This document shows positions 15,008-59,143 of a stretch of 64,000 bases of DNA, piece by piece. How positions within the stretch are numbered: the first letter of the stretch is position 1; the number at the start of each line of letters is the position of its first letter. The DNA is from Stylophora pistillata. Taxonomy: Eukaryota. The stretch spans positions 383,921-447,920 of the forward strand of contig NW_019217985.1 of NCBI RefSeq assembly GCF_002571385.2, in the 5' to 3' direction. A model generated the notes under the pieces. The model saw only the letters and a program-made list of their open reading frames with translations. It did not search any database and was not told the origin of the DNA. The position numbers were made by a program, and so were the translations under genes.

Positions 15008-15315
15008 GGGGAGGCGCGGTGGCCTCATGGTTAGTGCGCTCGACTCCGGGTCGAGTGGTCCGGGTTCGTGTCCCGGCCGGGACATTGTGTTGTGTTCTTA
15101 GGCAAGAAGAAACTTTTCTCTCACAGTGCCTCTCTTCACCCAGGTGTATAAATGGGTACCGGCAATCTAATGCTGGGGGTAACCCTGCGATGGACTGGCA
15201 TCCCATCCGAGGGGGAGAAGAAATACTCCTGGTCGCTTCATGCTACAGAAACCGGAGTTAAGCACCGGCCTAATGGGCCACTAGGTTCGTAAACAGACTT
15301 TTATCTTTTACCTTA
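15008..15315 (+). mobile_element. Full-length tRNA-derived SINE
   Basis: A-box TGGCCTCATGG, B-box GGTTCGTGTCC, central CTCTCACAGTGCCTCTCTTCACCCAGGTGTATAAATGGGTACC, T-rich repeat tail; second copy at 32528-32820. Confidence 0.9.
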
Positions 15316-33000: not shown

Positions 33001-36000
33001 ACAACTTGTTTTGTAAGTCTGACCATGATGCCCTATCCAATATACCACACAAACCTCCAAATATGAGTGCTTGTGAAACCACTGCCCACTGAACCATCAC
33101 ACAAACTCTGCAGCCCACAGATAGATAAATGGGTTCTAGCTGCACTTTTAAGGAAGAAGAGAGAAGAAGGAAAGAAGAATTAAGGTGCCTCCCTTACCTC
33201 CCCCCCTATCATTCCTCACCACCCCATCATAATTAAGAAAGTCTCCCGTGTATAGCATGCATAGCTTGCCTATGTTCTTCATGTAAATTCCTTTGTTTAC
33301 ACCTTCAGATCAATTTTTAAGTGGTTCAGCTGCAAGTCCTTCTACTGATTCACTAAATTCAGGTACTGCAAGTCACACTGTATGGCACCTAAGTTACCTT
33401 TAGTTTGTAATATGGACTCACTTTAACGAGTTTTTATTCAAGCATGAGTAGTGTTAAGAGCCAAGTTAAAGTGTATTTATTTAGCATTTGAGACCATATG
33501 CAGCCTTGCTTGACAGACGACCTTTAAAAAAAAACTTTTTAATGGTCTTCACCAACTCAAATAGATGTAATGCTTCATTTCCTTTTGTTGTGGCACAGGT
33601 AGGAGCGTAAAGCATGAAATAAGGTGACTTGTTCCTTTTTTCCCAATTTGTATAGCTAAGTGATCCAGTTCCTTAAATACTTATTACCAAATTATTACTA
33701 TATTAATTTATCAGATGCTGACAGCTTCCCTGGTAAACTGACAGCTCAAATGGACAAAAATAGTAAGTACAATGGCTTTAATTTCATTCTTGTATGTTTC
33801 AAGACTTAATAAAAACGAACAGCTAGACCAACAGCAACTGAGTTTGTGTTCTAGTCTGTCATATAGAAATAGTATCATAAAAAGTAAATATAAAAAGACA
33901 AAAATTGGAGAGACATCGGTTTACACACCCTGAAAATATTATAAAAGATTGATTTTGATGTGAAGGACAATGTTAGGGACAGTGAGAATCTTTTCTCAGC
34001 TGAAAAGGGCTTTACAACCTTCTGGAAATCAAGTACTTAACAAGGGTGAGAATTAATGAAAATAAATTTATCCAATGAAGGAAAAAAACTGTTCATTACC
34101 TTCAAAGAGGTTTCTCAGCAGCAGTAAGGGCTGGCAGGCATGTTCAAATCTTTATTCAGAGTGTCCGAAGATCAGCTTGTCACCTTTATTTCACTATAAT
34201 CAACACCACACAAAAGTGTCTAACTTTTAAAGCATATAGATCCCATGTGTTTCTGTTCTGAAAGGCACAGCTGAGCACATCACTCAAGTTCTTACCACAG
34301 TTTGATGTCTTCTGTGTCTATTACTGTACAGACCCAATTAAAGTAACATATAATGGTTTTGTTTTTCTTTTATTCAAAAGCAAAAGGTTGTTAATGGTGA
34401 TGTCATCTATGTCTCTGACCCCTACTGGATCATAAGAACCAATCAAAATGTGTGCATTACTCATCTTATCATAAAATATCATACTCACTGAGTTTGAAGA
34501 AAATATTATCAAGTTAACTGACTTAGTACAATTTCATGACTAAGTTGTTACGCCAGCTGTGTTGTTACCAAATTTGGATGAGTTAATGTTTGGTCTAAAA
34601 AATATCACAAAAATGTCACAGTGTCACCCTTTTTATAAAATCAGTTTTGGGTATTTCAATCACCTACACCCCTAGAAGACAAGTAAAGGGTTAATACAGC
34701 AAGGATTATGACTTAATCCTTAGTCATTCAGCATCATCTCTGCAATCTTCTACACAATGTGTGTATTGTTTATGTACTGCCTTGAGTTTCTGACTCAAAT
34801 AACCAGTTCTGTAAATCTTTGAATCCTATTTCCAGCATAGGTTTTCAACTAAAATGAAGGTGAATAATCATTCAAAATATTCTCTCTCGTTTCAATAATT
34901 ATTCTCTCTTTGGTCGAAGGATGCAAACTATTTACAATGATTATTCCTAAGTGATCTACTGTGAAGAACAAATATTGTGAACTCCTTGTTATTTGTGAAA
35001 CCAATAAGTCTCTAGAATTTTTGCTGGTTCTATTCAAATCATGTCGAAATTTATAAAGATACATTTGGCATAACTTTGCGCTCAGTCAAGGATACAAAGC
35101 ACGGAAAGGCTACAAAGTCAAAGCTCCATATTTGTGTGAAACGTACTTGAATTCAGTTTTTCGTATTTCATTATGCATTAATGGCAAAGACAATATTGAT
35201 TGCCTTTGGGACTCATAACGGCTTTGTTAATTGTATGGAATTATTAAGGAAATCGTTCCCTTTCTCAAATAGCAAGAAGGTCATAAGCTTATGTTGGCGC
35301 GCCGAGAAAACGTTTGCGTTCATATTTCAGCACTGAGATAACCTTCCTTTGCCGCCAGAGGGTCTCTTGTGTTTTCGATCTCTTTTTCGACGTGAACTCA
35401 ACCTTGTGTGGTTCGACCTTGGATATCATACCTGAGGTCATGTTTTGAATATGTTTAAGACTGTCTTATTTGACCGTCGCCTCAGGAATATCGTCTTTAC
35501 CCCAATTAACCTAGTTTTCACGTTTAAAAGAGAGAAAAATAGAAAAGAGATGATATTTGTGGATGTATTCATTGCAAACGTATACTGACAGGTGTACTTC
35601 CGACGTATTAACAGACGGCCTGTCAAGAGCTGTGCACAGAGAGCTGAGTAGCAACCGCGTCAAGGTTGCCAATTTTCCCCCACTTTTAGCACCGTAGTTA
35701 CTAAAACAAGGAATGACCTATAATGACCTACAATGATCTACAATGACCTACAGTGAGCTACAATGGGCTACAATGAGCTACAATGAGTTACCGTGGGAAC
35801 GAGGAATGACCTAAAATGACCCACAATGACCTACAATNNNNNNNNNNNNNNNNNNNNNNNNNNNNNNNNNNNNNNNNNNNNNNNNNNNNNNNNNNNNNNN
35901 NNNNNNNNNNNNNNNNNNNNNNNNNNNNNNNNNNNNNNNNNNNNNNNNNNNNNNNNNNNNNNNNNNNNNNNNNNNNNNNNNNNNNNNNNNNNNNNNNNNN

Positions 36001-39000
36001 NNNNNNNNNNNNNNNNNNNNNNNNNNNNNNNNNNNNNNNNNNNNNNNNNNNNNNNNNNNNNNNNNNNNNNNNNNNNNNNNNNNNNNNNNNNNNNNNNNNN
36101 NNNNNNNNNNNNNNNNNNNNNNNNNNNNNNNNNNNNNNNNNNNNNNNNNNNNNNNNNNNNNNNNNNNNNNNNNNNNNNNNNNNNNNNNNNNNNNNNNNNN
36201 NNNNNNNNNNNNNNNNNNNNNNNNNNNNNNNNNNNNNNNNNNNNNNNNNNNNNNNNNNNNNNNNNNNNNNNNNNNNNNNNNNNNNNNNNNNNNNNNNNNN
36301 NNNNNNNNNNNNNNNNNNNNNNNNNNNNNNNNNNNNNNNNNNNNNNNNNNNNNNNNNNNNNNNNNNNNNNNNNNNNNNNNNNNNNNNNNNNNNNNNNNNN
36401 NNNNNNNNNNNNNNNNNNNNNNNNNNNNNNNNNNNNNNNNNNNNNNNNNNNNNNNNNNNNNNNNNNNNNNNNNNNNNNNNNNNNNNNNNNNNNNNNNNNN
36501 NNNNNNNNNNNNNNNNNNNNNNNNNNNNNNNNNNNNNNNNNNNNNNNNNNNNNNNNNNNNNNNNNNNNNNNNNNNNNNNNNNNNNNNNNNNNNNNNNNNN
36601 NNNNNNNNNNNNNNNNNNNNNNNNNNNNNNNNNNNNNNNNNNNNNNNNNNNNNNNNNNNNNNNNNNNNNNNNNNNNNNNNNNNNNNNNNNNNNNNNNNNN
36701 NNNNNNNNNNNNNNNNNNNNNNNNNNNNNNNNNNNNNNNNNNNNNNNNNNNNNNNNNNNNNNNNNNNNNNNNNNNNNNNNNNNNNNNNNNNNNNNNNNNN
36801 NNNNNNNNNNNNNNNNNNNNNNNNNNNNTCAATTTAACAAATGGTAAACACCACAGCGTACACTATTGAGTTATGGATGCACGCGGGAGGTTGCTAAGCA
36901 CGAAAGAAGCGTAAGAGTCGCTCGAGGCGATAGCCGAGAGCGACTCTAGCTTCTTGAGTGCTTAGCAAACCTCCCAAGTGCATCCATAACTCAATAGTGT
37001 ACGCTGTGGTGTTTACCATTTGTTTTATAACATAACATTGATACATTGTAGCTAAAGAGTTCCCGTTTATTTAACAAATCTTACGCGACCAGAAAAAACA
37101 AGCGCGCGCGGAAAAATAGTCTTTGCATTTGCTCACGTCAGCAGCGTACACCCATGGGCAAATGGGGAACGCTAAATTGACCAATCAGAGCGCGCGCTTT
37201 ACTTTGGTTATGTTACAAATTCTGTTATCATTTGGCCTGTTATTCAGTGGACAAAAAGCAAACACGTTACGTTAATGCACACATGTCTCAGTCACGGTCC
37301 TGTTTTTTTTTTTCTTTGCCTTTTTTCTAAAATCTTCATTTCCTTCATCACAGGGATCTTACAGTAGCTCATTGTAGGTCATTGTAGGTCATTGTAGCTC
37401 ATTGTAGGTCATTGTAGCTCATTGTAGGTCATTGTAGGTCATTCCGTGTTTTAGTAACTACGCTTTTAGCGCACGGTGATGGCATTGCAAGTAACGCAGG
37501 GGAAAGAAGCGTTCACTCACTGACCATAAAATCATCATGGAAAAATTGACCTGATAAAAAAAAAATTAATGAGAGTTCAAAGACACTGTTTTGCAGTCAA
37601 TCGAATATCCGCATCAACTAAGGAAATGCTCGGCAGTTATCTTTAAAGGTGTATTCTGCGATGAGAAACTCCTAATAATCATTTGTTTTAAAATCACAGT
37701 TAAAGATTTAGGGAGTTTACACCTTTTCCCTATTTCTTGTTCCTCAAGCCCATTGAATTTCATCAGCTCCTGCAGTGTACTTAAAGCCAAATTTTTGGAA
37801 ATTTTACACCTTTGGATCAGTATTCCAGTGCAATTTCGTTTCAATATCGTATCAAACTAGAATGAAATCTGGGGGAAGTAACTACGTACAGTGCATAGTT
37901 TGTGCACAGCTAGATACAATAGATCCTTTCAGCCTCAAAGATATAATAATTGTAGAAATCATTTAGTGATTAAACTATTTTCCTCTATTTTGCTTAGTTT
38001 TGACCGATTATCTGGAAGCACAGAGGGCTCGCATCAACGATTTGAGGGTCGCGAAGTGGACAACAGAAGGCGCAGACATCGCATATCATCTGAATCTTAC
38101 AGAATCTTCAAAAAGACGGCCTGATCTGGAGGAGGGAGATGTGATTGCCTTTTTGACCAACCCCAACGCAGGAAACACGGAAATAGAGAAACTATCACAA
38201 GAGAATTCATCGCGAGCCGTTTTGGCAGGTGTCATCAGTCGATCAGCTTACATATATGCGCATGCACCTCGTTACGGCAGCGAGAAAGGTAGGTTGTGCA
38301 ATATTTCAAAATAACGGCAAATTACTGAGCATGCTCAGCTTGTTGGTCAGGAAACGAATTTGAGGTTTTCGTGTAACCCGCCCAGTTTTCAAATTATAAG
38401 CTTTACCAGTAAGATTACTATTTTTTTTATACCGCGCGATAGACTTCGCTGAAATGGAGGAACTGCTCGTAGTCTACTTATCAATAGACATCTTACTTGA
38501 TCAAGCTCATCTGAAGTGTGTCTCATCCATGATAAGACGGCTTACAAAACGTTTGTTTTCTTCTTTTTTCTTATTTCTTAATTGAACTTTGGACTGAAAA
38601 GCAGAAAACACTGCATCACTCGCAGACCCGTCCCCATAAAGCTGAAAGGCCTCATATAGCAAGTAACTAGTTCTTGTAACTTCCTGAAGCCCACCATTTC
38701 ATAGTCGGACGAACAAGAGGTTCAGGGGCTCGTTTCTCGAAAGTCCCGGTAACTTTACGGGCCCTTAACTACGGTTTTAAAATCAAAATTTAAAGGATAG
38801 GAAAGCAGGTTCTGGCACCCAAACCAGCCCTTTTTGTTTCTTTAGCTGATAGTTTTATTACATCATTTCAAAACTTTTGAAATCCCCATCTTGAATGAAA
38901 ACAGAACAGCTTTACGGGCCCGTTAAGTTACCGGGACTTTCGAGAAATGGACCCCAGGGCAGGTAATAGGGGTAAAACATTCTTTCTGAAACACCAGGCA

Positions 39001-41923
39001 GGAAACTTATAAGTTTCCAGTTCATGAGGAGTTATAAACATCTCGAGAGATTTGAGATCGTGAGACTACTCTGGATTGTTCCACCTTTTAGGTAGCACTG
39101 AGACTGTTTGTGTTATCGGCTTGGTCAAAGTTAAAGTCCTTGGGACCGTTCAGAATGGGGAGCGTATATATGTTGCACTGCATCAACCGGGTGTTGCCAT
39201 TCCAGAGACGCAGATTCCGTTACGACCTATGGCCGACCGCCGCCCGGTTTTGCTGGGTCAGGCGCTTGAGAGCAAACCGAGTAACTCTCAAGACAATGTT
39301 TAATTGGTCCAGTGCTTTGTTTCTATAGTGCTCGGTATTCAATCTGGTCAGATTAACGCTGCCATAGAAGACCTTCAGGAGAAGATGCAGCGCAAGTTTG
39401 AAGATGTCGTGGTCAAAGACAGATCAAAGTGGCTCAGAGGTGATGTTTTGTCTTTTTCAGAGTATTTCTAGAGCAAGGAACTGCATCGCCGGCTTCATTT
39501 GCTTCAAATGGTTAGTTTTATCAAGCTTAGGGTTCCGGAGCTGCCCTTTTCTACCTTCAAGTTTAAAATCGGTGCCTGCTGGGTAGAGGCACCCTGCTCC
39601 CTGATAATTCGCGGGGAGAATTTGTTCGCAGCAGACAATCTAAACTACGAACTGAGGACTGGAGGTTCTAACCTGCATCGTTGACGTCACCTTAGCCTGT
39701 TACGGACTGAGAATCACGACTGCGAGTACGCTTGTAACAGCGCCAGTTACAAGGATCCGATGAGACATTCTTTCATTCGCAGTATCGTGATAAATGTCTG
39801 ACTCACAAAACACCGGAGCACCAAGCAAATGAGGCCAAAAATTACAATGACGAGGGCAGGATGATAAGAATAGCGTTAAGTTATTAGTTATTATTTACTT
39901 ATTCATTTATTTCTTTATTTTGTGTTTCTAAACAGGCACTTTACTATTTCTTTTTCGTAACTAGGTCTGAGATGGAAAATTTTCATTCTCCTTATCATTT
40001 TCGGACTGCTTTCTGGTTTATTGTACGAGTTAATTGCCCCAGGAACTTGGTTCCAGTATCAGATGTGTAAACGTGGGTGCATTAAGGGTCACACAGCTAC
40101 CTTTAAATTTACAACACATGATTATCAAGTAAGTGTCTGAGCTAAGAATTATTTCCCTCGAATCGCAAGTCACATATAACGTGTCAAAGTCTTCTCAATT
40201 CAACTATTTCGTTGTTTCGAATATCCTAATTATCTTTTGGTTCACCAAAAGAAAGTGATGGGACAAAAAGGGAGAATCAGGACGTAGGATATTTCTACCA
40301 AAGTAAATTGACAATATGATTATGAGCTAGAGATGTTTTTCGCGTGATACTTGATTTGGGTGAAGCTTACATCAAGTATCAAGCATAGAAATCGATCACA
40401 GGAATAAGCTGAATGTTTCCTCGTAATCTACTCGTTATTAAGACCCAACCACTGTTAGGCTACTCATATAACTCACTACGTAGCCAACCAGATTCCAGCA
40501 ACTGTGATAGAACGCTGTGCACTAAGAATAATTACCAAATATCCATTTTATCTCTTACTTCAGTATATCAAAGTGAACGGGCTGGAATTAACGTGGGAGA
40601 AATTGAAGAAGAAAAAAGAGCTGGATCTTGGAGATTGCCAACCGTTTAACGCTACAGCTGGTGAGAACTAGTGTATCATTTGTTCTTTAATCCCCTTAAT
40701 TCTAGTACAGTCGAACCTCGATTAACGGCCGGACCTCGATTATCCGGACTTTTTTCTCTGGTCCCAATTTTTTTCATGAATATTAATTAGTTGTGATCTT
40801 GAAAACTCAGAGTTGCAGAAAGCCCAATAATCCTTTCAAAAGACAGTTGAAACAGCGTATTATCCTGTGCGCTTTTCAAAATTCGTAAGTGCGACGAGAC
40901 AAAGAAATATTCTGTTGCGTTATTTGCAAATACATACGGGCTGTGCAGATATCACAATTAAAATGATGTTTTCTTTGCTGTATACCTTTTGTTTACATTT
41001 CTATCTCATTAATATTCATATTTTCGATTATCCGGACTCTCGATTATCCGGACTATTTGCCGAGGTCCCGACGAGTCCGGATAATCCAGGTTCGACTGTA
41101 CTCAGTTTTTCAGCTTATTTATCCATAATTAAGTGTATCTTTGCATGCACTTGATTGGTCCGCCTCGACTAGATCTGCAAACTGCGGATCAACGCATTCT
41201 CAAATTTTGTCATGATATTAATAAAGTTAGTCAAGATATTGCCCTTCTCTAGGTGCAAATAATCAGCTCCAACACTTATCAGAGGAAAGGTTAAATTTAC
41301 TATATGAATCTCCTCCCGTTTCTTGTCCTTAGGATTACACCGACCCATTTCCCTTGAATCTTTGTTAATTAAGCTTTATGTTTATCGTTTGAAACACAGT
41401 GGAGTGGGACCGGTCATTAATTATCGACGGGGATGAGGGGAAGGGGGGTCGGAGATCCCCCATAAGGCTTTGTAATATTTTTACGACCCCCTCCTCATTG
41501 GCGCTTTCTATAGTCCCCCCTTTATACTCTTTTGGCGAAGACTGATCTCCCTTCCTTCCCCCTGAAAACCACTTGACCTTCCCCAAAGTCCCACCCCCCT
41601 TAGCCGCAAAGGCAGTCGGTATATGCGCCTTTCTGTGATGCAATGTTTATTAATTTTGACTGGAGTTTTGATTTCAGACAAACAAGGTTTCTTCTTCACT
41701 TGTCATTTCTTATTTTCCTTTCCCCTAAGGCTATCGTTATTACCTTAACTTGGATCGCTGTGCATATGGCGAGCGGATCGTGTTGGACCACAAGCCACAG
41801 ATACGCGGACCAACGGTTTTTGCCATCAACTCCACTTGCTCTGGTGTTTATTACGTGAACAAAGACAAATGGCAAGGGTACACTTCGGCAGAACACATCG
41901 AGCGTGAGCCACCTTGCACCTAA
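30037..41923 (+). CDS. Gene C: putative membrane-tethered transcription factor, ~604 aa if the internal TAA at 39301 is ignored (putative DNA-binding domain, NLS, Peptidase_G2-like chaperone, coiled coil, TM, luminal domain). Exons 30037-30091, 30741-31004, 31529-31777, 32245-32295, 33309-33362, 33715-33762, 37998-38288, 39092-39439, 39965-40128, 40564-40660, 41730-41923
   Basis: Eleven phase-consistent GT-AG exons total 1815 nt and are colinear with gene D (DIAYH, LEEGD, AGVISRSAY, VCVIGxVxVKVLG, LLGQxLE, TM+PGT, YYLNLDRCAYG). One in-frame stop means this may be a null allele or pseudogene in this assembly. Confidence 0.8.
32528..32820 (-). mobile_element. Full-length tRNA-derived SINE, same family as 15008-15315, in gene C intron 4
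   Basis: Reverse complement aligns end-to-end with the 15008 copy. Confidence 0.9.
35838..36828. other. Assembly gap (run of N)
   Basis: About 990 N; the poly-X ORFs here are artefacts. Confidence 1.
36829..37220 (+). mobile_element. Hairpin-plus-tail non-autonomous element nested in the TIR element
   Basis: ~90-bp inverted arms around CTCGAGGCGATAGCCGAG, then a tail containing TTGACCAATCAGAG. Confidence 0.7.
38726..38954. mobile_element. Harbinger-type MITE in gene C intron 7
   Basis: TIRs GGGCTCGTTTCTCGAAAGTCCCGGTAACTT / AAGTTACCGGGACTTTCGAGAAATGGACCC; CAG TSD. Confidence 0.8.
40708..41098. mobile_element. Tc1/mariner (pogo/Tigger-like) MITE in gene C intron 10
   Basis: TA|CAGTCGAACCTCGATTA ... 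TAATCCAGGTTCGACTG|TA. Confidence 0.85.
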
Positions 41924-48596: not shown

Positions 48597-50466
48597 CTAG
48601 TCGTTTTCCTTCAGCTCTGGTTTCGTAGGATGTGTATTACACACGATATCCCTGCCGGATTCGTATGGGGTCCATACCTCCGAATGAAAATATACAGTGG
48701 TGCAGTTGTGATCAACTGCTACTACTTCTGCACCCCGCACCATTTCTTTGTTGTCTAAATGCGACCGAACATGTCGGATTCCGCCATAAGCACATCTGTC
48801 CAGATTCAGATAATAATGTGCGTCTGTAAGAGAAAGAAAACGAGCTCATTAACAGGGGTAAGGCATGATTATTGAGTTTATGTACGTCTTGAAATCACTT
48901 AACCCCAAAAGTTTTCGATTGGTCATTTAAAATGCGTGTCAGGCTGCTCCAATCTTAACCAAGCTGGTTCCGTTGTGAGATTTATCACAGTAATTCTCTA
49001 TATAATTTACTTCCCTTTTCTTGGTTTACCTAAAATTTAGGGAACCTGTTATTATTTATCGCCTGGGCGGACAATAATTTTGGTTGTATCACAGAAGGGA
49101 ATAAAGCTCTGGATTATTCTAATTAATTCCCCCCTAAATGGCAGTCAATTTTCTATCGTACCCCTTTAATACCCTGTTAGCGACGATTAATTCCCACCTC
49201 CGCTACCCCTGAAAACCATTCCTCCATTAGTCAATTTGTAAAAATATGTGTTATGTAGAAGTCTATAGCCTCTATGACTCTAACTTTACCTGTGTAGTTT
49301 ATTCTGCCAAAGTTCAAACCCATTTTTTCCTTCAACTTGTCGAAAGTAAACTCAATACAGTGTACGCGAGGAATCTGTGTACGGAAAAAGAGGACACTAT
49401 CAATGAAGGGGTAAAAACAACACGCTACTCACTATGTTGTGCATCTTATGTGGCAGAAAAAAAAGCAATTTCAAAGGAACCCTTTTTTTTTCTTCCAACA
49501 AAACCTATTCCCGGTAGTTTGGGTAACAGGAGAAAACAAATACTGTTTAGTTCAAAACAAAGAAAATAGCGACAACTGTCGATAATCCATTGAACAAATC
49601 CTCAGTGTTATTTCTTAGCCATGGAAAGTATTTTTTTTGCGGATCAATTCCAAACCATACCCAGTACAGCTAACTCTCTATTTTTAAGTAGAGAAGGTGT
49701 GGTAATACCTGGAAGTCTGTGGTGGTAAATGTGAACCACAGCTCACTGCCTTCGATGGAGCCCTGACGACACCTGTAATAACGAAGCGCGGTGCCTGGGA
49801 CGAACAACTGGTATAACAAAACTCCTAATAACACAGCTAGAATGAAGCCTGCGAACAACCAGCGGCGAAGCCCTATAGAAACGTGCAAACATGTATTAAC
49901 GAATGAGATAAATTCACCCACTATGAAAAGAGGCGATTAATACAGTGAATTTCATTTTTGATTCTTAGCTATTATAAGAGTAAAAGAGTAGCGATAGTAA
50001 TTGTCAATTGATCTTGTGATATCAGACCTAGACTTTCACTCAACAAAACGAGCACTGTGATTGGCTGATTCTTGTTCACGTGTTTCCTGATCAAATTCAA
50101 ATGCATCCTGAATACAACAGTATGTTTTTGCCATCTGAATGTTTAAGGGAAAGTCAAAATATATAACAAAGCACCTAATGTATGGTCCCTCGGGAAACTA
50201 GTCAGTTTTATTTTCCCTCGAGTCTTGATGTTTCCCGAGATGAAGTCGAGGGAAACATCAGAACTCTCAGGAAAACAAAACTAACGGTTTCCCTCGGGAC
50301 CATACATTAAGTGTATAATGTTCACCTTTAATTAATTTCTATATTCGCCTTACCTTACCTACGTCAGAGCAAAGGGCTAACGCTAGAAACGTCAGCTTTT
50401 TAACTCTTTACGGTGGCCAATTTACAATTTCAACTTAGTTGATGTAACCAAATTACCTTGCTACCG

Positions 50467-50500
<34 letters not shown>

Positions 50501-53500
50501 TTCATCCTTTATTCATTTACCTAACGAACAGGCGTACACTTTTTAAGTTTTTCAGGCGAGCAGACGCTCAACGCGAACGCGAAGGTCGAGTCACGTGAAT
50601 GATAAGGAACGCGGGGGTCGAGTTACGCGCGAGAGAAGGAGCGCGAGGGGTGAGTTACGTTCGTGAAAGGATCGTGAAGATTCAGCAACGTGCGTTTGAG
50701 GAAGCACGAAAATCGTACCACGCATAAGAGGAGGAACTTGATGGTCGAGTCAGGAGAGGAGGTACAAGTACGATTCGGCCTTTGCACTCGCCCCAAAAAA
50801 AGCATACTAGAAGACCTCGTGTATAATGAAAAACGTCAAATGATCCAAAAAATTCAAAGATAGGCGACATAATTACCTGAAAAACATTTCTTCTTCATCT
50901 TATTCACTTCAGTTTTGACATCTTCTCTGACGTGCTTCCGCAAGTCGTCGCTCGCAGCCTCGGCCATGTGACTGGATGTAATACTTAGGAGAATCGAAAC
51001 GAACGACTGTACCAAATTAACATCGTTTTCTTCAGCGTCCCGTCTTTCTAGTGTTTGGCCGAGTAGAAAGGCATCACTGGCCATGCGACCGTTCAAACGG
51101 CTCTGAGGTATAGCAACTCCTGAGTGTTCCAATGAGGCAAAAATTCGCTCGCCGTTTTTCACTGGACCCAGTACTTTGACGTTCACCATGCCAATCACAC
51201 ACACGAGATCGTCTAAACCTGACACAGAACAGCCAGAAAACTCACTTAAACTTGTTAAAAAAATATTCATAAGTTTGGACAAATTACAGTAAGATCTCCA
51301 TTCGGGGAGAAGACCTCGAGATTTGAATAAAAAGAACCCAGCATTCGTTCTTATGAGTCTTTCAGTACAACTTTGGACAAATCACAGTAAGATCTCTATT
51401 CAGGGAACAACAAACTCAGGAGTAGAAAAAGAGTCCCTCCGATAGGGCGCTGCTGTCCCTTTGATAAAAGAGACACACTGATTACAAGCGCATTTTTTCA
51501 GTTGTGACCAAAGTTTGCATACTTTATATTGAGGTGCTCCTATGTAAGAGAAAAGGGGAAAAAGACCTCCAAATACGAAAGGAAACCTTGGTTATAGGGT
51601 TGACGAGTAACAATAAACTGATAACCTTCTCTCACTGTTACCTTTTTCTTCGCCATCTGCTGGTGTCCTGGCCTCTAAATACGCGGATCTACTGATCACT
51701 CCCGCCATCTTAGCTTTAGACGCATTAAATTGGGTCAACTTCTCTATGTGGGTGTTGCCACTGGAACTTTCAAAGAACCCAATGATATCACCCTCTTCGA
51801 GAGGAAGGTCGAGTTCGGTTTTGTTCAGTTTGAAATGATAAGCAATGTCTCCTTTCTGTGTAAGAATAGGCTTCTTAACTCGCAGTTCATTAATTAGGGC
51901 AGATTGAGCGTCGAGGCGGTTTGTAATTATCTCTGCGGCATTGATACCTGGAAATAAGAGAGCAATTCATAAACCAAATAATACGTTGTTAACAGACAAA
52001 AAACTGGGCTCTTCAAATCGTCTGGGTCATCTCCCGAGGCATGAGGGATCAGTGCCAGGCCGATAACACGAACCAAGTCCTTGCTCTGCTGCAAAACTCG
52101 AATCAAACTGTTTCACTCATCTGCAAAACGGCTTGTTTTCTATAAGTAACACGTTTTAACTGGAAGTAGTAGAACTTTTGTCTGTGAGTATGACACGACC
52201 GAAACAGGAAAAAGAAGAGGATCGAGCGATCTGTACATGTTGCACAGGTGACACTTTACTGGTGACTTGTGATTAAGTCAAGAAAGATGCCAGGCGTGTC
52301 TTAGTTGATGCTCCGTCAGGTCCACTAAGTAACAGGAAAAGTCCTAGTTAAGGCAGTGACTTACAATCGCTGTTCATGCCACTGCTCCAACTTCCACTGG
52401 GACTGGTATCCAATGCCAACACTACAAGAAGAGAGAAAGAAATGAGCTGACAACAAACAAAATACGACTGCTTTTGTCAGCGGTTACACGCCAGACAAGA
52501 GAGATTTTCCCCAACAATCAACGTGAAAACAGAAAGATTTAGAACCACGTATACTGCAGATGCGGACGGCAAACACTAAACTCTGATTCTGCTTACTTTT
52601 CTTCCAATACTCAACTAAATTAACAGTAAAGTAGAAGAATTACAAAGCAAACAGAAAAGTTCAACTCTCCTGAGTTGACGCTCGCGTAATCATGGTTCAA
52701 AATTTCTTTCTTGTTATCGCTCATGAACAGAGATGTCAGTTAAAATTTACAGCGACAACTGTAATACATCGACGTGTCGAATGAAATACGTGAAGCATCC
52801 TCTGGTCCACAGTTAAAACTATTGGGTGAAATATAATTTGAGTGACTTTTCTTCCCACAAGGAGCAAGCATCTTCAAATTGCTCAATCGCAGTGTCTGAA
52901 ATGGGAGAAAATTTACCTACCTGAGATTAGCCTTTTCCGGGCGAAATAGAAAGAAGAGGTTATAATTTTGAGTGGGGTCGCGTACAAACGAAACCTCTCT
53001 CCTTTGCACAACCCGACCCAAGCCTCTCTCGGCCGCGATCGCTCCGTTTACAACAGTTTTTTCGTTCCATTTTACTAACTGAACGCCCAGAACAGGCTAC
53101 CCCGTGATTAAAACGTCCACAACTTACTTTTTCGCTTTTTTCTGTTATTTTCCGGACTTGGTGTTCCACAATATCCATTATCCACGCTTACCAAATCCTC
53201 TTCTGTGAAATGCAGCAGACAAAAAAGACTCAGATCATTGCTGTATGTATCACCACAAGAGTGTGGTACAAGAGCAAGGGAAACATTCTTCGGGTTCAAT
53301 GCGGCGATTCTGAATTTTCTAGTTATCATATTTAGCGTTTACAATCTTCATCTTCATTCACCAAATGAAACTAGGAAATTTGAAGAGGCCGAGAAGGGTC
53401 TGGACAACCTTGCTCAACAAAATTTGGTTCCCGATTATCTGAGAAATTTTCATGGATGTACTGAGGGCTCTTCGCAGTTTGCAATCTTAATCTACAGGGA

Positions 53501-56500
53501 CGCGGCGCCCCTCTCCCAATACAATAACCTGGCCAGGTTATCGTATAGTGCCCTTGTGCAAAACACTTTACTCTCTCCAGTGCCTCTCTCCAGGAGTATA
53601 ACTGGGCAACGACGAATTGTCAAGGAAGCCTGATGGAATGCTGAGAGGTAACCTCACGATGAACTAGCATCCCATCCAGGGGGGAGGGGGGGTAGTATTT
53701 CTCTTAGCTGCTTCATGCTGTGGAAACTAGAATAAGCTCTGGCTGAGTGACCAAGCCACTTGGCTCACGTAGAGACTTTGCTTCTTACCCACAAGGTCAT
53801 CGTGAGTACGAGTGCTGTGAACATTGTGCTATATGAATTATTCCCCGTCCAGTTTACCTGATTCCTGTTTCGCGTTTTTTCTGCTTTGCACTTGGAAGCT
53901 TTTACTGATGAATTCCTTCGTCGTTCCATCCGCAAAATGAAGCACAACAATCACGCGGAAGATGTTTCTTTCCTCTCCTTTAACGCGTGAAAGTTCATAT
54001 ACTTTAATGCCATTGTTACTATAAACTGAATCGAGGTTGACGGCAAAATTCGCCACAAACAAATCCTTTTTACTGTACACCAAGTTCAAAGAAACTCGCC
54101 CATTCATGTCCTGAAGAATTCTGGCAGCCTCTGGACATCTTTCCACGTATGCACGCACATCCTGGGAAAAACGTAACAAGACGACATTAGGAGACAGAAG
54201 CGACGTACATTACGAATACAGTCGACTCCCGAGAACTCATATCCTCTCTAACTCAAACCAAAATCGATTTCTCTTACACCTTCCCCCTCAGGGGGCGGGT
54301 GAGGGGAGGGTGCACCTCCTAGTAAGAGGCTAGTAGGAATGTGCCGCTGAATAGGGTCGCATATTGCACGACTGGGTCAACTATGTTGGAGTTTCGTCTA
54401 GATTGGGGTCGTACATTTTCGGGATTTTTTTAGGTAAGAAAATTCTGGTAAAGCTTTAACTAAGGTAGATGCTTAAACAGAAAGTGACTAAATTGGAATC
54501 GCGAAAATTACATTTACCCCAAAGTGACTGAGATAGGGTCTATAGTTGGCCACAATAGACTAGTGGTTCTGAGAGGCCAGCAGCACATACACAGCAAAAA
54601 TTGACCAAAGTAGCCCCCTTCCACCTAGGACCATTCCGTTCATGCGAAAATCACATTACGATTCATAATAAAATATGACAGCTGTGCATAATGTTAAATA
54701 AATTAGTAATGTTCTTAATCTTTTTCGCAAAGGGTCCTTGAATAGAGACCATATTTTAAAATGAAGTTTTAACTTAAACTTAACTTAACTTAACTTAACT
54801 TAACTAAACATAATCAACCACTACCCACAAATAGCATAGCTAGTCGCGGCGGGCAGTGTGTGGACGCTAAAACATCTTACATAAATTTCGGTTCAACAAA
54901 AGATTCAATAAATATACAAGAAACAGAAATTAAATATTAAATCATTAATTTAAAAGCAGAAATGACAGTATGAGATAAAAATACAGAAATAGAAACACAT
55001 GACAATAAATAGAAGAATACATAAGTTATAGGCTACTATTAACTGGATTTAACTTTTGACACATCATTGATTATCCGTTCTACGTCAACATAACTATCTT
55101 GAACTTGAAGATTTTGAAATAATAATGTTGTTAGCTGTTCATTCGAGGCTGAAAAGAAGCGAAGCCCGATCTCAAGAGGAAAAAGTTAATTTATTCAATT
55201 AGTTGATTCCTTCAAGTTTGTCTTCATTTAGGATAAACGCGAATTAAAAAAATCTAATTACCTGAATTGGTTTTTGTGAAGTTGCCATGAGGTGTACCTC
55301 TGCATCCAAGAGCCTTTGTTCTGAGTTTGCATTTCGTCGCATCTGTCCTTTCTCGTAGACATCTTTCAAATCCAGAATGGTCACATTAGCCTTCGTATCT
55401 TCCGTATAGGTCACGTCGAATGAAGGAAACACTAATAAAAGTGAAAATCAAAGTCAAAGACTTATTCAAAGAGAATTGCCTCTCGCATAAAGCAAGCATT
55501 AACCTTTAAGTCACCTGAGTGACCAAGATAGAATTTCTCAATCCAATATCAATACAATATCAATCAGACAAGAGAATAAAGAAAAATATCCATCAGGCTC
55601 CGGTTGTTCAAAGGGCGGATAACGCTATCCAACGGATAAATCGCTATCCAGCGGATAAGTGTTACCAAAACGTACTGCACTAACCACTGGATAGAGATTA
55701 ATCCAGTGTATAGCGTTATCCATCCTTCCAGCGGATAAGTGTTACCAAAACATACTGCGCTATCCACCGGATAGAGATTTATCCAGTGTATAGCGTTATC
55801 CATTCTTTGAACAACCGGGCCCAGCAGATTATTAGTTGATTCAGTGCCAAATTCTCTAAACTCACACTATTAAAACTGTTCGGCACACAGTAAGGAGAGT
55901 TACAAATGAGATCTTAGTGGGGAATGCGTTAAAAGCTAATTTCCCGCTTACTAAATGGAGGTATCTCTGACAAGTCCGTTCACGCAATCGAATTAGCACT
56001 GACTTTGGGTGAACTAGCGATATGAAATAAAACGTGGTTACGTTTCTGGGAACTTTTAGGGTCAAAAACGATATTTGTGAAAGGAGCAAATTAAAACCAA
56101 TTTCACGCTTAGGTCTAAGACTTGCTTTTTGGACGCAAGGCGCGATCCTTCTTACTGTGTAACTTGAATTAAAACTCACAGATGAAAAACTAAATATAAC
56201 TTGATCTATGCTTTAATATGTAAGGATACTTTAGAGCTAGATTATTCCTTTATTTTACCTAACCAGCTATCTAGGTGGGGGCCACACGTTTCAATTTTCC
56301 AGGTGGGACGAAGGGGAGATCAGTCGTCGCTAAGAGCCTCATAGAATAAAGGGGGACTATAGAAAATTGAATGGCAAGGAGAGGGGAACTTAGGGAAGAT
56401 CAGGTAAATATTCTTGGGACAAAAATTAAGTCCTCCGACCTCCCCCACCCCCCCTTCCCACCCAACACCCCCTTCCCCTTCACCCATGCAATAAATAATG

Positions 56501-59143
56501 ACCTCCTCGACCAAAATAATTGTTATCGAAAAGAGAAAGACCAGAGAGAAGATTTACATCACGTGGGCCGTACGGTTTTTTGATACGATTATTCATCTTC
56601 CGCCATAAAACGTGACAGCAACAAATCTGACTAAACGAAAAAATGCGCACGTGCATAACCTCCTCGTCTCCTACCGACTAAAGTGGCATTTTAATAAAGA
56701 ATTTTGCTACTAGGGCTCCACAGTTCTCTGTGCATTTCACACATAAAATGCACTGAAATTTGACGCATGTAGCCAGTTGCATCGCTCGCGATAAAGTTTC
56801 AAAGAGCGCAGTTGTACTCTCTAGATATAGGTGAAGATTTTGAGCAAATGTGAGGCGTTTCACTTGGACAAAAAAAATTGAAATCGCTGTTCAGAATTTA
56901 GCAGTCGACGCAGGAGGATGCACGGCAGGTTAAAACGTGACTTGTGCCATTCTTTTTTACAAGTACATGTGTGCATGTGCACGTTGCATCTTTATCCTTA
57001 GTAAAATTCAATCTTATAATCACAATGAACACTTGACAGCGCATATTTACGATCAACACCGACTTATTGTGGCAGAGCGTCAGTAATTGCGCACAGGTAC
57101 ACCAAATCCTGCTTTACCATTGTAAAAGAGGTGCAACTGCTTGTAGGATAGAGAGTAAAGATTTAAGTGAAGAAAATGAACCCACGACTTTGCTTCTATC
57201 ACCCATCATCCGAGACGTGCTTCATGAAGAACGTGACAAAAGAACAAACTAGAAAAGGAGTTTTTACTCCAATTTACAATTCTATAACTTAGACGGTTTT
57301 GCAATTGACTCGCTGAAGTTTATTTATTCGCTACGGATTTTAATTTCTCTACACTATGTAAAGATATTTTCATTACACACCCCAAAAACCTGAATATCAT
57401 TCAATAAATATTTCACAACTTTTCCTAAGGATATATCAGGCAATACAGGGACTAGAACCCCACTAAGGGACTCTATTGTCTGACTTAGATACGCTTTACG
57501 CTCGTCAAATTTCGAACAGCTATGTAGCTTTGAGTGGGTTTTACTGTTGTCTTTTTTTTTTTTTTTTTTACAGACCTAACCAATAATCGCTGAGATTTTT
57601 CTAGTCATTAGGTCATGTCACAAAATCGCCCAAAATTGCGTGACGCAGTTCATGCATGTATGAAAACGTGACGAGAATTTCAAATGAATTCACCTAGCAC
57701 AATCGCGCGCTGATTACATGCAAGATGATTGATTCGAGTTTGGCCATTAAAAAGAAGGGAAAAAGTTAAAAATAAAATTCGTTTACTCTTAATCCTCAGG
57801 CATGACTTGACGAACTAGTTTTCATCGAGAATTTTAGGAACTATGAAACCTACGCACGCGTGGAACGTGACCTTGCCATACTGACATTTTTAACGTCTGA
57901 CACGTTCAAAACCTCTTATTACAGCGAGTGCACGTTCAAACTTATCTAATGCACTCTTTTCACAATTAACTCTTCGTTTCATCGGTTCAGCAAGATAAGT
58001 TTGTTAAGTCTGTTAAAACGGCCAACATGCAAGAAACTTTAATTTAAAGATTCAACGCATTGTCGGAAATTACATGTCAAATTAAGAAGTCAAATTTTAA
58101 CAAAATGCAACTAGTGCTTTTAACTATTAGTTGTATTTTATTATTATTTAGCCTGTTCAGCAGTTTAAAACTACTAAAAGCATAGTAATCAAGAAGACGA
58201 TACGATCAGTAAGGGTTTTGTGTAATGCGCGACATTTATTTCCTTGCGCAAATTTCGCTTGTTGAGTGATATCCTTTGTAAATAATATAAGGCCTTTAAA
58301 TTCGTTCCAATATCAATCCCAGACAAAAGCTTAACCAGAACAATAATATATACAACCTCAAAAGACAACAATGTGCACTACCATGCAAATGGCAACCTTG
58401 AAGGCTAGCCAAGGTCAACACTGAAGTATTATCGATCGAGAGTAAAAATTATCGACAGAAATTTACTGCATTTTGCTAACTGAGCCATTGTCAGCTAACG
58501 TTGATATAAATGAAATCAATTTACATAAAAGGTAGGGTTGTAATCACCTGTCAAAAGCTAAAAATCTGACGAAGGCAGGCCGCGCGTGCAAACAAAATGA
58601 CTTTTCATTCTTGAGTTAGTTGAACAGGGAGTTATAATTGAACTTGCATAATCTATGGTAACGAATAAATATATCGTTAAAGTATTACGTTCGAAAATTT
58701 AGGCAGGTCTCAAGTCAGTTACTTGGAACAAAAACTCAGTCATCGTTGGGAGTCTGTGACAGTCAATTACTGGCAGAGAAATACAACATTTGAAACTTCA
58801 CAGACCGTATTATAACTTAATGGAAAACGATGAAAGTACAGTATATCATTCACCATTTTCCCAATCATATCATGACTACATTACGGACGCACTGTGCGAT
58901 AGACTAACAGTTAAGCAATTAAAAATACTATTGAGCGCTGCATGAATTTTTTTCATAATTATTTTACCTATCCTTTGTACGTTTATTTCATGTCATAAGT
59001 ATCCTACCTGTGATTGGCTTACCTGGATCACAACTCTGAAGAAAAGCTGGGTTGAAATACAAACTGGTGTCTTCCAGAATTTCATCCAAAGTGATCGGCT
59101 GTCCGTCGATATTTAGTACATGGTCATTGCAAGGGTCGCTCAT
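48597..59143 (-). CDS. Gene D: intact putative membrane-tethered transcription factor, ~616 aa (acidic N-terminus, putative Ig-fold DNA-binding domain, NLS RKKRK, beta-helix-like stalk, Peptidase_G2-like chaperone, coiled coil, TM, luminal domain). Exons 59143-59023, 55431-55262, 54161-53858, 53202-53128, 52421-52365, 51947-51642, 51218-50877, 49872-49709, 49374-49290, 48823-48597
   Basis: Ten phase-consistent GT-AG exons give an open 1851-nt CDS. It is homologous to gene C over its length and to genes A/B in the N-terminal domain. TM segment WLFAGFILAVLLGVLLYQLFV. Confidence 0.85.
50020..50320 (-). mobile_element. Hairpin-plus-tail non-autonomous element in a gene D intron
   Basis: Inverted arms ~50172-50313 around CCCGAGATGAAGTCGAGGG; tail contains GTGATTGGCT. 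Confidence 0.65.
50365..50520 (+). mobile_element. Penelope-like element remnant with decayed hammerhead motif
   Basis: AAGGGCTAACGCTAGAAACGTCAGC...TACGGTGGCCAATTTACA...CACCGACGCAGCACCACAGTTTCTTTAGAAAC; related to 6570-6670. Confidence 0.55.
53550..53770 (+). mobile_element. Diverged 5'-truncated SINE related to the 15008 family
   Basis: CACTTTACTCTC...CAGTGCCTCTC...GCATCCCATCCAGGGGG...GCTTCATGCT...GAAAC...TAAGC. Confidence 0.7.
54771..54806. repeat. (AACTT)n microsatellite
   Basis: About 7 units. Confidence 0.85.
55597..55821. mobile_element. Harbinger-type MITE nested in an older TTAA-flanked element (~55499-55933)
   Basis: TIRs GCTCCGGTTGTTCAAAG / CTTTGAACAACCGGGCC, CAG TSD, internal ATCCA..GGATA repeats. 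Confidence 0.8.

What the first reader, a model, noticed from the sequence alone, without database searches (positions are those of the whole stretch)
48597..59143. MYRF-like membrane-tethered transcription factor built with a phage Peptidase_G2-type chaperone (genes D and C)
Seen: spliced D and C both read acidic N-terminus, shared ~140-aa domain, basic NLS (RKKRK / KRKR), Ser-rich linker, periodic stalk, then a domain G(A)DIAYH...LEEGD[IV]I...AGVISRSAY...VCVIGxVxVKVLGxVxNGERI...GVAIP...LLGQxLE...LVQxFV, coiled coil, one TM helix and a small C-terminal domain. Established: phage and bacterial tailspike intramolecular chaperones of the Peptidase_G2 type (phi29 gp12 C-terminal domain and relatives) follow the pattern AD[YF]AE...GDVV...GVVS...GxVxVKV...GDxL...GxA...GKALE. 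They trimerise an upstream beta-helix and self-cleave. MYRF uses the same logic (Ig-fold DNA-binding domain, beta-helical stalk, phage chaperone, coiled coil, TM, luminal domain) but with the unrelated Peptidase_S74 chaperone. Inference: this is an independently assembled analog of MYRF, a trimeric membrane-anchored transcription factor using a second phage-derived module. I know of no described animal family like this.
Basis: partly seen in the sequence, partly recalled or inferred. Interest (0 to 1): 0.95.

Follow-up and report, generated by a model that had tools for sequence, protein, structure and literature searches.

The report
Coral membrane proteins with phage chaperone domain
Two neighbouring coral genes encode membrane-anchored proteins whose juxtamembrane part is a true relative of the trimer-forming "self-chaperone" at the end of phage tail fibres. 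The layout matches that of the animal transcription factor MYRF but uses a different phage module, and whether it cuts itself loose and acts in the nucleus is still untested.

Summary
RNA-seq contigs join the exons of gene D (minus strand, 59143-48597) into one transcript with an open 616-codon frame. Gene C (plus strand, 30037-41923) is a paralogue.

- An unbiased search of 48,161 PDB chains put the phi29 gp12 C-terminal autochaperone first (Z 10.9, 21% identity).
- Profile-profile comparison links the coral domain to a large family of phage tail-fibre C-termini, some annotated Peptidase_G2 (98.2%, E 2.9e-14).
- A homotrimer of stalk, domain and coiled coil is predicted (0.91 against 0.02 for controls).
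- The invariant Asp that opens the domain aligns with Asp692, the residue just after the phi29 cleavage site.

Three things are not shown: self-cleavage, nuclear entry and DNA binding.
- The Glu that is invariant three residues after that Asp in 239 phage sequences is Tyr in all 38 cnidarian proteins.
- The N-terminal domain matches only generic Ig-like folds.
- Pfam's Peptidase_G2 model does not hit.

The family is named only from Cnidaria, carries no annotation, and I found no paper on it. Verdict: a real, undescribed animal family built on a second phage chaperone, laid out like MYRF, with its mechanism open.

The parts
48597..59143 (-). Gene D: 10 coding exons, 616 codons, ATG at 59143, stop codon at 48597-48599
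   Evidence: RNA contig joints; loose ends mapped; GT..AG at every junction; open frame
59023..59143 (-). D exon 1: acidic N-terminus
   Evidence: Translation; the loose end of the X1 and X8 contigs maps to 59025-59052
55262..55431 (-). D exon 2: first third of the N-domain
   Evidence: N-domain HMM positions 3-51, 50 bits; joint 54160|55261
53858..54161 (-). D exon 3: rest of the N-domain (Ig-like beta-sandwich)
   Evidence: N-domain HMM positions 47-149, 117 bits. In the model of paralogue C, residues 40-185 have pLDDT about 90. Only generic Ig-like matches
53128..53202 (-). D exon 4: linker with the basic cluster RKKRK (NLS-like)
   Evidence: Joints 52421|53128 and 53202|53858; translation. 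A KRKR-type cluster is found in 27 of 38 family members
52365..52421 (-). D exon 5: Ser-rich linker
   Evidence: Joints; translation
51642..51947 (-). D exon 6: about 30-residue trimeric stalk, the G|DIAYH junction (Asp codon 51847-51849), and the first half of the G2-like domain
   Evidence: Family HMM 128.6 bits. Asp is invariant in 38/38 and aligns with phi29 Asp692
50877..51218 (-). D exon 7: second half of the G2-like domain (VCVIGMVNVKV...GERI...GVAIP...LLGQTLE...LVQSFV) and the start of the coiled coil
   Evidence: 58 database hits; hhalign to phage tail-fibre C-termini
49709..49872 (-). D exon 8: transmembrane helix and the start of the lumenal domain
   Evidence: Joint 49871|50876. 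Hydrophobic 19-mer, with more positive charge on the N-terminal side across the family
49290..49374 (-). D exon 9: lumenal domain, with the N-Y-T sequon spanning the junction to exon 10
   Evidence: The contig loose end maps to 49347-49374. The donor site was chosen by frame and homology
48597..48823 (-). D exon 10: lumenal Cys-containing domain (HYYLNLDRCAYGG...) and the stop codon
   Evidence: C-domain HMM 83 bits. The acceptor site is inferred, not seen in reads
30037..41923 (+). Gene C: paralogue with 11 coding exons. An assembly gap (35838-36828) lies in an intron
   Evidence: tblastn of P0015 and P0069 at 90-100% identity per exon; gap positions
37997..38290 (+). C: stalk, the A|DIAYH junction and the first half of the G2-like domain
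39091..39441 (+). C: second half of the G2-like domain. It carries an in-frame TAA at 39301-39303 in this assembly
   Evidence: Transcript-derived P0015 has Lys at that position

Best explanation
D and C belong to a cnidarian family of single-pass type II membrane proteins, with the N-terminus in the cytosol and the C-terminal Cys/N-glycan domain in the lumen or outside the cell.

**The module.** The cytosolic, juxtamembrane part is a domesticated relative of the C-terminal intramolecular chaperone of phage tail fibres and tailspikes (the phi29 gp12 / Peptidase_G2 fold). Together with about 30 residues of upstream beta-stalk and a downstream coiled coil, it forms a homotrimer.

**Most likely working (inferred).** It works like MYRF. 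Trimerisation at the ER membrane is followed by a cut at or near the invariant [G/A]|D-I-[A/G]-Y junction. That frees a trimeric N-terminal piece (acidic tail, Ig-like domain, KRKR-type basic cluster), which goes to the nucleus.

**My odds, step by step**
- Homology to the phage module: about 0.9.
- Homotrimer: about 0.8.
- N-in / C-out topology: about 0.8.
- Release of the N-terminal part: about 0.4.
- The released part binds DNA: about 0.3.
For: **Gene structure and expression**
- One spliced transcript spans the N-domain through the TM exons.
- The frame is open for 616 codons.

**Fold**
- Best of 48,161 PDB chains: 3gqh_A, the phi29 gp12 C-terminal fragment. Z 10.9, rmsd 3.4 A, 118 residues aligned, 21% identity, model 267-415 against chain 692-854.
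- Uncleaved gp12 (3suc): Z 10.9, model 261-415 against chain 686-854. This places coral Asp267 on phi29 Asp692.
- Foldseek against predicted structures of viral proteins (BFVD): 47 hits at E <= 1e-3, best 3.3e-9, many named as phage tail-fibre-like and 'preneck appendage' proteins.

**Sequence**
- Family alignment against PA5oct gp359 (a virion protein encoded next to the long tail fibre gene): 95.7%, E 8.8e-9, 131 columns, including ADIAYH against ADLAERYE.
- Coral domain against 120 gp359-like C-termini: 98.2%, E 2.9e-14.
- Five of those 120 carry PF11962.
- A protein language-model search gave a PF11962 set for 18 of 30 hits.

**Trimer**
- ipSAE 0.91, 0.90 and 0.91 in three runs, against 0.02 for the best control. 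At least 96% of contacts agree between runs, and the partner's pLDDT is 85.
- The interface covers residues 237-266, patches of the domain, and 415-444.
- The tool's calibration: the mark was reached by 21 of 30 proteins solved as pairs of one chain and by 0 of 23 solved as single chains. It was set on two copies of microbial proteins, so the counts hold only roughly here; on animals 7 of 16 reached it.

**Topology and nuclear signal**
- A strongly hydrophobic helix, scoring above 2 on the Kyte-Doolittle scale in 33 of 38 members.
- Net charge of +3 to +8 before the helix in 37 of 38, against 0 to +4 after it.
- 4-8 Cys in 37 of 38 and 1-3 N-x-S/T sites in 37 of 38 C-terminal domains.
- A KRKR-type cluster in 27 of 38.

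**Soluble paralogues**
- Genes A and B carry the N-domain without any tether.
Against: - The Glu three residues after the junction Asp is invariant in both phage sets (119/119 and 120/120). It is Tyr in all 38 cnidarian proteins. If that Glu is the catalytic residue of family G2 (my memory of MEROPS and Xiang 2009, which I could not read here), the phage chemistry is gone.
- Pfam PF11962 hits no member at E <= 1, nor the coral genome.
- The direct profile link to phi29-like sequences is weak: P 0.0012 over 31 columns. The bridge from gp359-like to phi29-like sequences is 45.9%, P 2e-4.
- Non-cleaving capsid cement proteins share the fold at Z 8.2-10.0. PF22758 matches 12 of 38 members below threshold.
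- The N-domain shows no likeness to NDT80, p53, Rel or other DNA-binding folds at Z >= 7.
- No data here bear on protein cleavage or localisation.
- The trimer pass may partly reflect the model's memory of the solved gp12 trimer.
Confidence: 0.45

Rival explanations
1. A trimeric membrane protein that does not cut itself. The phage-derived domain serves only as a trimerisation clamp, as in capsid cement or decoration proteins. The Ig-like N-domain then acts at the membrane as a cytosolic adaptor or binding module, or in the nucleoplasm if the protein sits in the inner nuclear membrane, which would also explain the basic cluster.
For: - The phage-invariant Glu at +3 is replaced by Tyr in 38/38.
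- Cement proteins share the fold at Z 8.2-10.0, and PF22758 is the only Pfam family that recurs, in 12 of 38 members.
- The N-domain resembles generic Ig-like/E-set domains, not transcription factors.
- In the trimer model Tyr270 packs against residues 346-348 of a neighbouring chain, which looks like a structural role.
Against: - The junction Asp is invariant, is preceded by a small residue in 36 of 38 members (His in two), and lies exactly where phi29 is cut.
- The best sequence relatives are tail-fibre C-termini with the D-L-A-E motif, not cement proteins.
- An NLS-like cluster and a long disordered linker lie upstream of the module.
- The overall order of parts matches MYRF.
Confidence: 0.4
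2. A membrane-tethered nuclear factor that is released by a host protease rather than by itself, for example by regulated intramembrane or juxtamembrane proteolysis as for SREBP and ATF6. The phage module only makes the trimer.
For: - The Glu at +3 is lost.
- The architecture has an NLS-like cluster and a single TM helix.
- A conserved lumenal domain of unidentified fold could act as a sensor.
Against: No protease site or sensor motif was identified. This reading does not explain why the junction Asp is invariant. Nothing here tests it.
Confidence: 0.12
3. Not a working animal gene: a viral insertion, contamination, or a decaying pseudogene cluster.
For: - Gene C has an in-frame TAA in this assembly.
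- One further copy of the G2-like exon and several copies of the N-domain exon on the same contig carry stop codons.
Against: - Gene D has nine GT..AG introns and is present, spliced, in poly(A) RNA-seq contigs from several studies.
- Orthologues with the same architecture occur in at least ten named cnidarian genera, including Nematostella and Hydractinia.
- The family alignment has 17 invariant columns.
- Transcripts of gene C read Lys where the assembly has the stop.
Confidence: 0.03

Closest known systems
MYRF (myelin regulatory factor; MrfA in Dictyostelium)
   Same: The order of parts is the same: N-terminal activation-like tail, beta-sandwich domain, NLS, short trimeric beta-stalk, phage-derived intramolecular chaperone, helix, single TM, lumenal C-terminal domain. 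MYRF trimerises through the phage module and then cuts itself (PMC3742443, PMC3742440, PMC8326128).
   Different: None of MYRF's families is present: no NDT80/PhoG domain, no Peptidase_S74 with its Ser-Lys dyad, no MRF_C1 or MRF_C2. The phage module has a different fold and family (G2-type). Cleavage, nuclear entry and DNA binding are unproven here. Peptidase_S74 occurs at 10 other places in this genome.
phi29 gp12 C-terminal autochaperone (Peptidase_G2, PF11962; PDB 3gqh, 3suc)
   Same: Best structural match: Z 10.9, 118-124 residues aligned, 19-21% identity. It follows a trimeric beta-structure and forms a trimer. The domain starts with an Asp aligned to Asp692, followed by a hydrophobic residue and then Ala or Gly. 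The GVIS motif and the G-x-V-x-V-[KR]-[VI]...G motif are shared.
   Different: - The Pfam model does not match.
- The roughly 50-residue phi29 insertion is absent.
- Glu695 corresponds to an invariant Tyr.
- The domain is internal, followed by a coiled coil, a TM helix and a lumenal domain, not at the chain end.
- Autoproteolysis and ATP-dependent release are unknown here.
C-terminal domain of PA5oct gp359-like phage tail-fibre or virion proteins
   Same: The closest relatives by sequence: 31-32% identity over 119-131 columns, hhalign 95.7-98.2%. It is a large family, with at least 1,858 proteins at E <= 0.001.
   Different: In phage the domain ends the protein and carries Y-A-D-L-A-E-R-Y-E with an invariant Glu. 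Only 5 of the 120 listed members are annotated PF11962.
Phage capsid cement or decoration proteins (Pam3 gp6, E217 gp24, HFTV1, TW1; PF22758)
   Same: Same fold, Z 8.2-10.0. Sub-threshold PF22758 matches in 12 of 38 members, best E 5.8e-4.
   Different: These are small stand-alone capsid proteins that are not cleaved. Identity is lower (11-18%). No score reaches the Pfam threshold.

Membership tests
Peptidase_G2 (PF11962 / phi29 gp12 C-terminal autochaperone) | Fold of gp12 residues 692-854 | tested here: met
   3gqh_A is first of 48,161 chains: Z 10.9, rmsd 3.4 A, 118 aligned, 21% identity. 3suc gives Z 10.9.
Peptidase_G2 (PF11962 / phi29 gp12 C-terminal autochaperone) | Match to the Pfam model at or above its cut-off | tested here: not met
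   0 of 38 members at E <= 1. No exon hit. No hit in the coral genome. The same model scores 293.9 bits on gp12.
Peptidase_G2 (PF11962 / phi29 gp12 C-terminal autochaperone) | Sequence homology to phage tail-fibre or tailspike C-terminal domains of this type | tested here: met
   hhalign 98.2%, E 2.9e-14 against gp359-like C-termini, 5 of 120 of which are annotated PF11962. The direct link to phi29-like sequences is only P 0.0012, and the bridge is 45.9%.
Peptidase_G2 (PF11962 / phi29 gp12 C-terminal autochaperone) | Homotrimer formed together with an upstream trimeric beta-structure | tested here: met
   Prediction only: ipSAE 0.91 against 0.02 for the best control, and the interface includes residues 237-266.
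Peptidase_G2 (PF11962 / phi29 gp12 C-terminal autochaperone) | Asp at the first position of the released domain (the residue just after the cut) | tested here: met
   Asp in 38 of 38 members, aligned to Asp692.
Peptidase_G2 (PF11962 / phi29 gp12 C-terminal autochaperone) | Invariant Glu at +3 (D-x-A-E). I take it to be catalytic from memory of MEROPS family G2, which I could not verify here | tested here: not met
   Glu in 119/119 phi29-like and 120/120 gp359-like sequences; Tyr in 38/38 cnidarian proteins.
Peptidase_G2 (PF11962 / phi29 gp12 C-terminal autochaperone) | Autoproteolytic release after trimerisation | not testable with these tools
   Needs protein expression and a cleavage assay.
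MYRF family | NDT80/PhoG DNA-binding domain | tested here: not met
   No Pfam hit in 38 members. No NDT80- or p53-like structure at Z >= 7.
MYRF family | Peptidase_S74 chaperone domain with a Ser-Lys dyad | tested here: not met
   No PF13884 hit in any member. PF13884 is found at 10 other places in the genome.
MYRF family | Single TM helix followed by the MRF_C2 lumenal domain | tested here: not met
   A TM helix and a lumenal Cys domain are present. There is no MRF_C2 Pfam hit, and the domain finds no structural match.
Phage_cement (PF22758) | Match to the Pfam model at or above 27 bits | tested here: not met
   12 of 38 members match, but all below the cut-off (best E 5.8e-4; 19.8 bits for P0033). 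No match in the genome scan, though its control genomes did not ring either.
Phage_cement (PF22758) | Small stand-alone capsid protein | tested here: not met
   The domain is internal in intron-containing animal membrane proteins of about 490-940 aa.

The most novel reading that the evidence does not exclude
Cnidarians built a second, independent MYRF-type switch: a membrane-tethered nuclear factor whose release depends on trimerisation and self-cleavage by a domesticated G2-type phage tail-fibre chaperone, using altered chemistry (Tyr where phage has Glu). On this reading the family expanded in tandem clusters next to untethered paralogues with the same N-domain. The module would have entered from a virus or microbe carrying the same D-V-A-Y variant, as seen in the intron-less Tara Oceans protein P0055.
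Probability: 0.3. Interest if true: 0.92.

Novelty: new variant of a known kind. Interest (0 to 1): 0.8.

Why it matters
MYRF was the first report of a phage tailspike chaperone mediating self-cleavage of a eukaryotic protein (PMC3742440), and I found no other animal case. A second animal family with the same layout around an unrelated phage chaperone would show that this design was reached twice. It would also give a natural comparison for how trimerisation is coupled to release.

Even if the domain no longer cuts, this is a clear case of a phage tail-fibre module domesticated in an animal membrane protein family. The family has no Pfam domain and no annotation, and it sits in model cnidarians (Nematostella, Hydractinia) where it can be tested directly.

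Tried and rejected
- **Pfam on single exons:** nothing.
- **Single-sequence and family-profile searches of PDB sequences:** nothing.
- **Foldseek of the whole 604-residue model against PDB:** no hit at E <= 1e-3. Weak rows for Pam3 cement, p63/p53 and CSL. The p53 and CSL rows did not hold up on re-alignment, with Z below 7.
- **PF11962 and PF22758 scans of the coral genome:** none.
- **Pattern scan of IMG/VR with the family alignment:** 54 pattern matches, none confirmed.
- **hhalign of the coral domain against phi29-like G2 sequences alone:** only a 31-column local match, P 0.0012; global mode failed.
- **Xiang et al. 2009 (the gp12 mechanism paper):** not available. Searches for the G2 catalytic residues found nothing.
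- **C-terminal lumenal domain:** modelled at pLDDT about 90, but the long helix filled the structural search list and Foldseek's best E was 0.085. Its fold is unidentified, and I do not claim it is new.
- **Origin of P0055's contig:** neighbouring ORFs carry no informative Pfam family.
- **Zinc-finger-like exon of genes A and B:** no Pfam hit.
- **Earlier notes of this scan:** none found.
- **Joined gene D model:** not sent to any search or folding tool. I searched its exons by reference and used the database protein P0015 to stand for gene C. The joined frame was translated only inside scripts, to check that it is open.

Full report
**What is there**

The window is Stylophora pistillata. The annotated protein SpisGene11838 matches gene C at 90-100% identity per exon, most exons at 100%.

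Gene D lies on the minus strand.
- Contigs from three coral RNA-seq runs give seven joints inside 49550-55500 that match this model, all GT..AG after the stated cut shifts.
- One 2,540-nt contig carries the exons from 55433 down to 49709. Its loose ends map to 59025-59052 and 49347-49374.
- With the last junction chosen by frame and homology, the coding sequence has ten exons and 616 codons, from the ATG at 59143 to the stop at 48597-48599.
Its two 'chaperone' exons are exact to the base.

Gene C (plus strand, 30037-41923, 11 coding exons, assembly gap 35838-36828 in an intron) is represented by the transcript-derived protein P0015, 604 aa.

I did not send the joined gene D model to any search or folding tool. 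Its exons were searched by reference and P0015 stood in for the family. The joined frame was translated only inside scripts, to check that it is open.

**The family**

- The second chaperone exon finds 58 proteins among 1.84 billion.
- Every hit that carries a source name and shows this architecture is an 'uncharacterized' or 'hypothetical' cnidarian protein. The only other named hit is a weak plant match at E 3e-5. The genera are Stylophora, Pocillopora, Porites, Acropora, Montipora, Orbicella, Oculina, Nematostella, Actinia, Actinostola and Hydractinia.
- None of the 32 relatives listed with precomputed Pfam annotation carries a domain, and my own scans found none above threshold.
- A 38-sequence alignment (A1) has 17 invariant columns.
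- In this coral, the five copies of the G2-like exon and at least nine further N-domain exon copies all lie on one contig, within about 240 kb. Several carry stop codons.

**The domain**

*Structure.* AlphaFold2 on A1 gave three confident parts for P0015: residues 40-185 (pLDDT about 90), 265-415 (about 75) and 480-600 (about 85). A long helix runs from 423 to 477.
- An exhaustive structural comparison with 48,161 PDB chains put the C-terminal fragment of phi29 gp12 first: 3gqh_A, Z 10.9, rmsd 3.4 A, 118 aligned, 21% identity, model 267-415 against chain 692-854. Phage capsid cement and decoration proteins followed at Z 8.2-10.0.
- Uncleaved gp12 (3suc) aligns residues 686-854 to model 261-415. 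Coral Asp267 therefore falls on Asp692, the residue after the phi29 cut (TWS|DFAEYFES).
- Foldseek against predicted viral structures gave 47 hits at E <= 1e-3, best 3.3e-9. Most are C-terminal parts of tail-fibre-like proteins, two are named 'preneck appendage protein', and a few come from giant viruses.

*Sequence.*
- tblastn found the C-terminus of PA5oct gp359, a virion protein encoded next to the long tail fibre gene.
- hhalign of A1 against gp359 gave 95.7%, E 8.8e-9, over 131 columns at 31% identity. It pairs TEGADIAYHLN with SKYADLAERYE.
- gp359-like C-termini form a large family of at least 1,858 proteins, and 5 of the 120 listed carry PF11962.
- Profile against profile, the coral domain matches that family at 98.2%, E 2.9e-14. 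That family matches phi29-like G2 sequences at 45.9%, P 2e-4.
- Two protein language-model searches pointed the same way.

I conclude that the domain is a true relative of the phage tail-fibre or tailspike C-terminal chaperone of the gp12 kind. It lies at the edge of, or just outside, what Pfam calls Peptidase_G2.

**Trimer**

Three copies of P0015 residues 236-455 were predicted to form a homotrimer. ipSAE was 0.91, 0.90 and 0.91, against 0.02 for the best of three controls. At least 96% of contacts agreed between runs, and the partner's pLDDT was 85.

The tool's calibration: its mark was reached by 21 of 30 proteins solved as pairs of one chain and by 0 of 23 solved as single chains. It was set on two copies of microbial proteins, and on animals 7 of 16 reached the mark, so the counts hold only roughly here. 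The pass may also partly be the model's memory of the solved gp12 trimer.

The segment 324-330 of one chain lies on 261-266 of its neighbour, so the junction sits in the trimer interface.

**What speaks for and against a MYRF-like mechanism**

*For:*
- The order of parts is the same.
- The junction Asp is invariant and is preceded by a small residue in 36 of 38 members.
- A KRKR-type cluster occurs in 27 of 38 members, upstream of a disordered Ser-rich linker.
- The topology is N-in, with net charge +3 to +8 before the TM helix in 37 of 38 members. The C-terminal domain has 4-8 Cys in 37 of 38 and 1-3 N-glycosylation sequons in 37 of 38.
- Untethered paralogues A and B have the same N-domain.

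*Against:*
- In both phage sets the residue three places after the Asp is Glu without exception (119/119 and 120/120). In all 38 cnidarian proteins it is Tyr.
- From memory, family G2 is classed as a glutamic peptidase, so this Glu is probably catalytic. I could not read the primary paper, so this step is unverified.
- The N-domain gives only generic Ig-like/E-set matches: the C-terminal domains of sulfite oxidase and sulfite dehydrogenase, ICAM, and the Ig-like domain of a peptidylarginine deiminase, at Z <= 9.0. No DNA-binding fold reaches Z 7.
- Capsid cement proteins, which are not cleaved, share the fold. PF22758 is the only Pfam family that recurs in the family, below threshold.

The trimeric, membrane-anchored, phage-derived module is therefore well supported. 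Release and transcription-factor activity are inference.

**Comparison and novelty**

This is not a member of the MYRF family. NDT80, Peptidase_S74 and MRF_C2 are all absent, although S74 occurs elsewhere in this genome. It is an analogue in layout.

It passes the G2 tests for fold, homology, trimer and junction Asp. It fails those for the Pfam model and for the Glu.

I found no paper describing it. A 2025 screen for membrane-bound transcription factors worked from Pfam domain pairs and could not have seen a family without Pfam domains.

I rate it a new variant of a known kind.

**A possible source**

P0055 (494 aa) is encoded as one uninterrupted ORF on Tara Oceans metagenome scaffolds with 55-61% GC. 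It matches the cnidarian domain profile at 140 bits, against 23 bits for the gp359-like profile.
- It has the D-V-A-Y variant and a following coiled coil.
- It did not match the N-domain or lumenal-domain profiles, and I did not test it for a TM helix.
- The Tyr variant therefore also exists outside Cnidaria, in an unplaced marine microbe or virus.

Noticed in passing
window 39301-39303 (+), gene C: An in-frame TAA sits inside the G2-like exon of gene C in this assembly. Transcript-derived P0015 reads Lys there, and the NCBI model P0069 skips the region. It is either a null allele or an assembly error.
   Followed up: partly
window ~9527-4343 (-) and ~25314-19685 (-): Two further genes (A and B) carry the same N-domain in two exons: 8629-9003 plus 8140-8445, and 23945-24208 plus 23526-23900. 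They have no G2-like, TM or lumenal exons. Each ends in an exon with a C-x2-C-x12-H-x6-C motif (FWWACG[YH]CFFERRKKSTIKAH..QRVC) flanked by basic clusters, which looks like a zinc finger. There is no Pfam hit.
   Followed up: partly
genome contig C202, about 199-438 kb (the window is C202:383921-447920): A tandem cluster. Five copies of the G2-like exon (two with stop codons) and at least nine copies of the N-domain exon (several with stop codons) all lie on this one contig.
   Followed up: partly
L012:1792-3276 (Tara Oceans scaffold; protein P0055): An intron-less 494-aa ORF from a marine metagenome carries the cnidarian-type domain (140 bits, D-V-A-Y-Y-H) and a coiled coil. It did not match the N-domain or lumenal-domain profiles. 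It is a possible donor lineage, but the organism is unknown.
   Followed up: partly
window 50346-50544: A stretch in the intron between D exons 7 and 8 has contig depth in the hundreds to tens of thousands in all four RNA runs, with many loose ends. It is probably a dispersed repeat or part of an abundant unrelated transcript.
   Followed up: no
window 53111-53338 and 51930-52112 (-): Two intronic ORFs share an 'AL[VI]PH[SA][CS]GD...LFCLL' repeat. Apart from the 75 bases of exon 4 (53128-53202), they are not part of the D transcript. They are probably a repeat element.
   Followed up: no
window 15013-15084 (+): A tRNA match to Rfam RF00005 (33.5 bits).
   Followed up: no
genome contigs C85, C742, C244, C40 and others: Ten Peptidase_S74 matches elsewhere in the coral genome. 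Some lie in very long open frames of 2,308 and 2,316 aa without stops.
   Followed up: no
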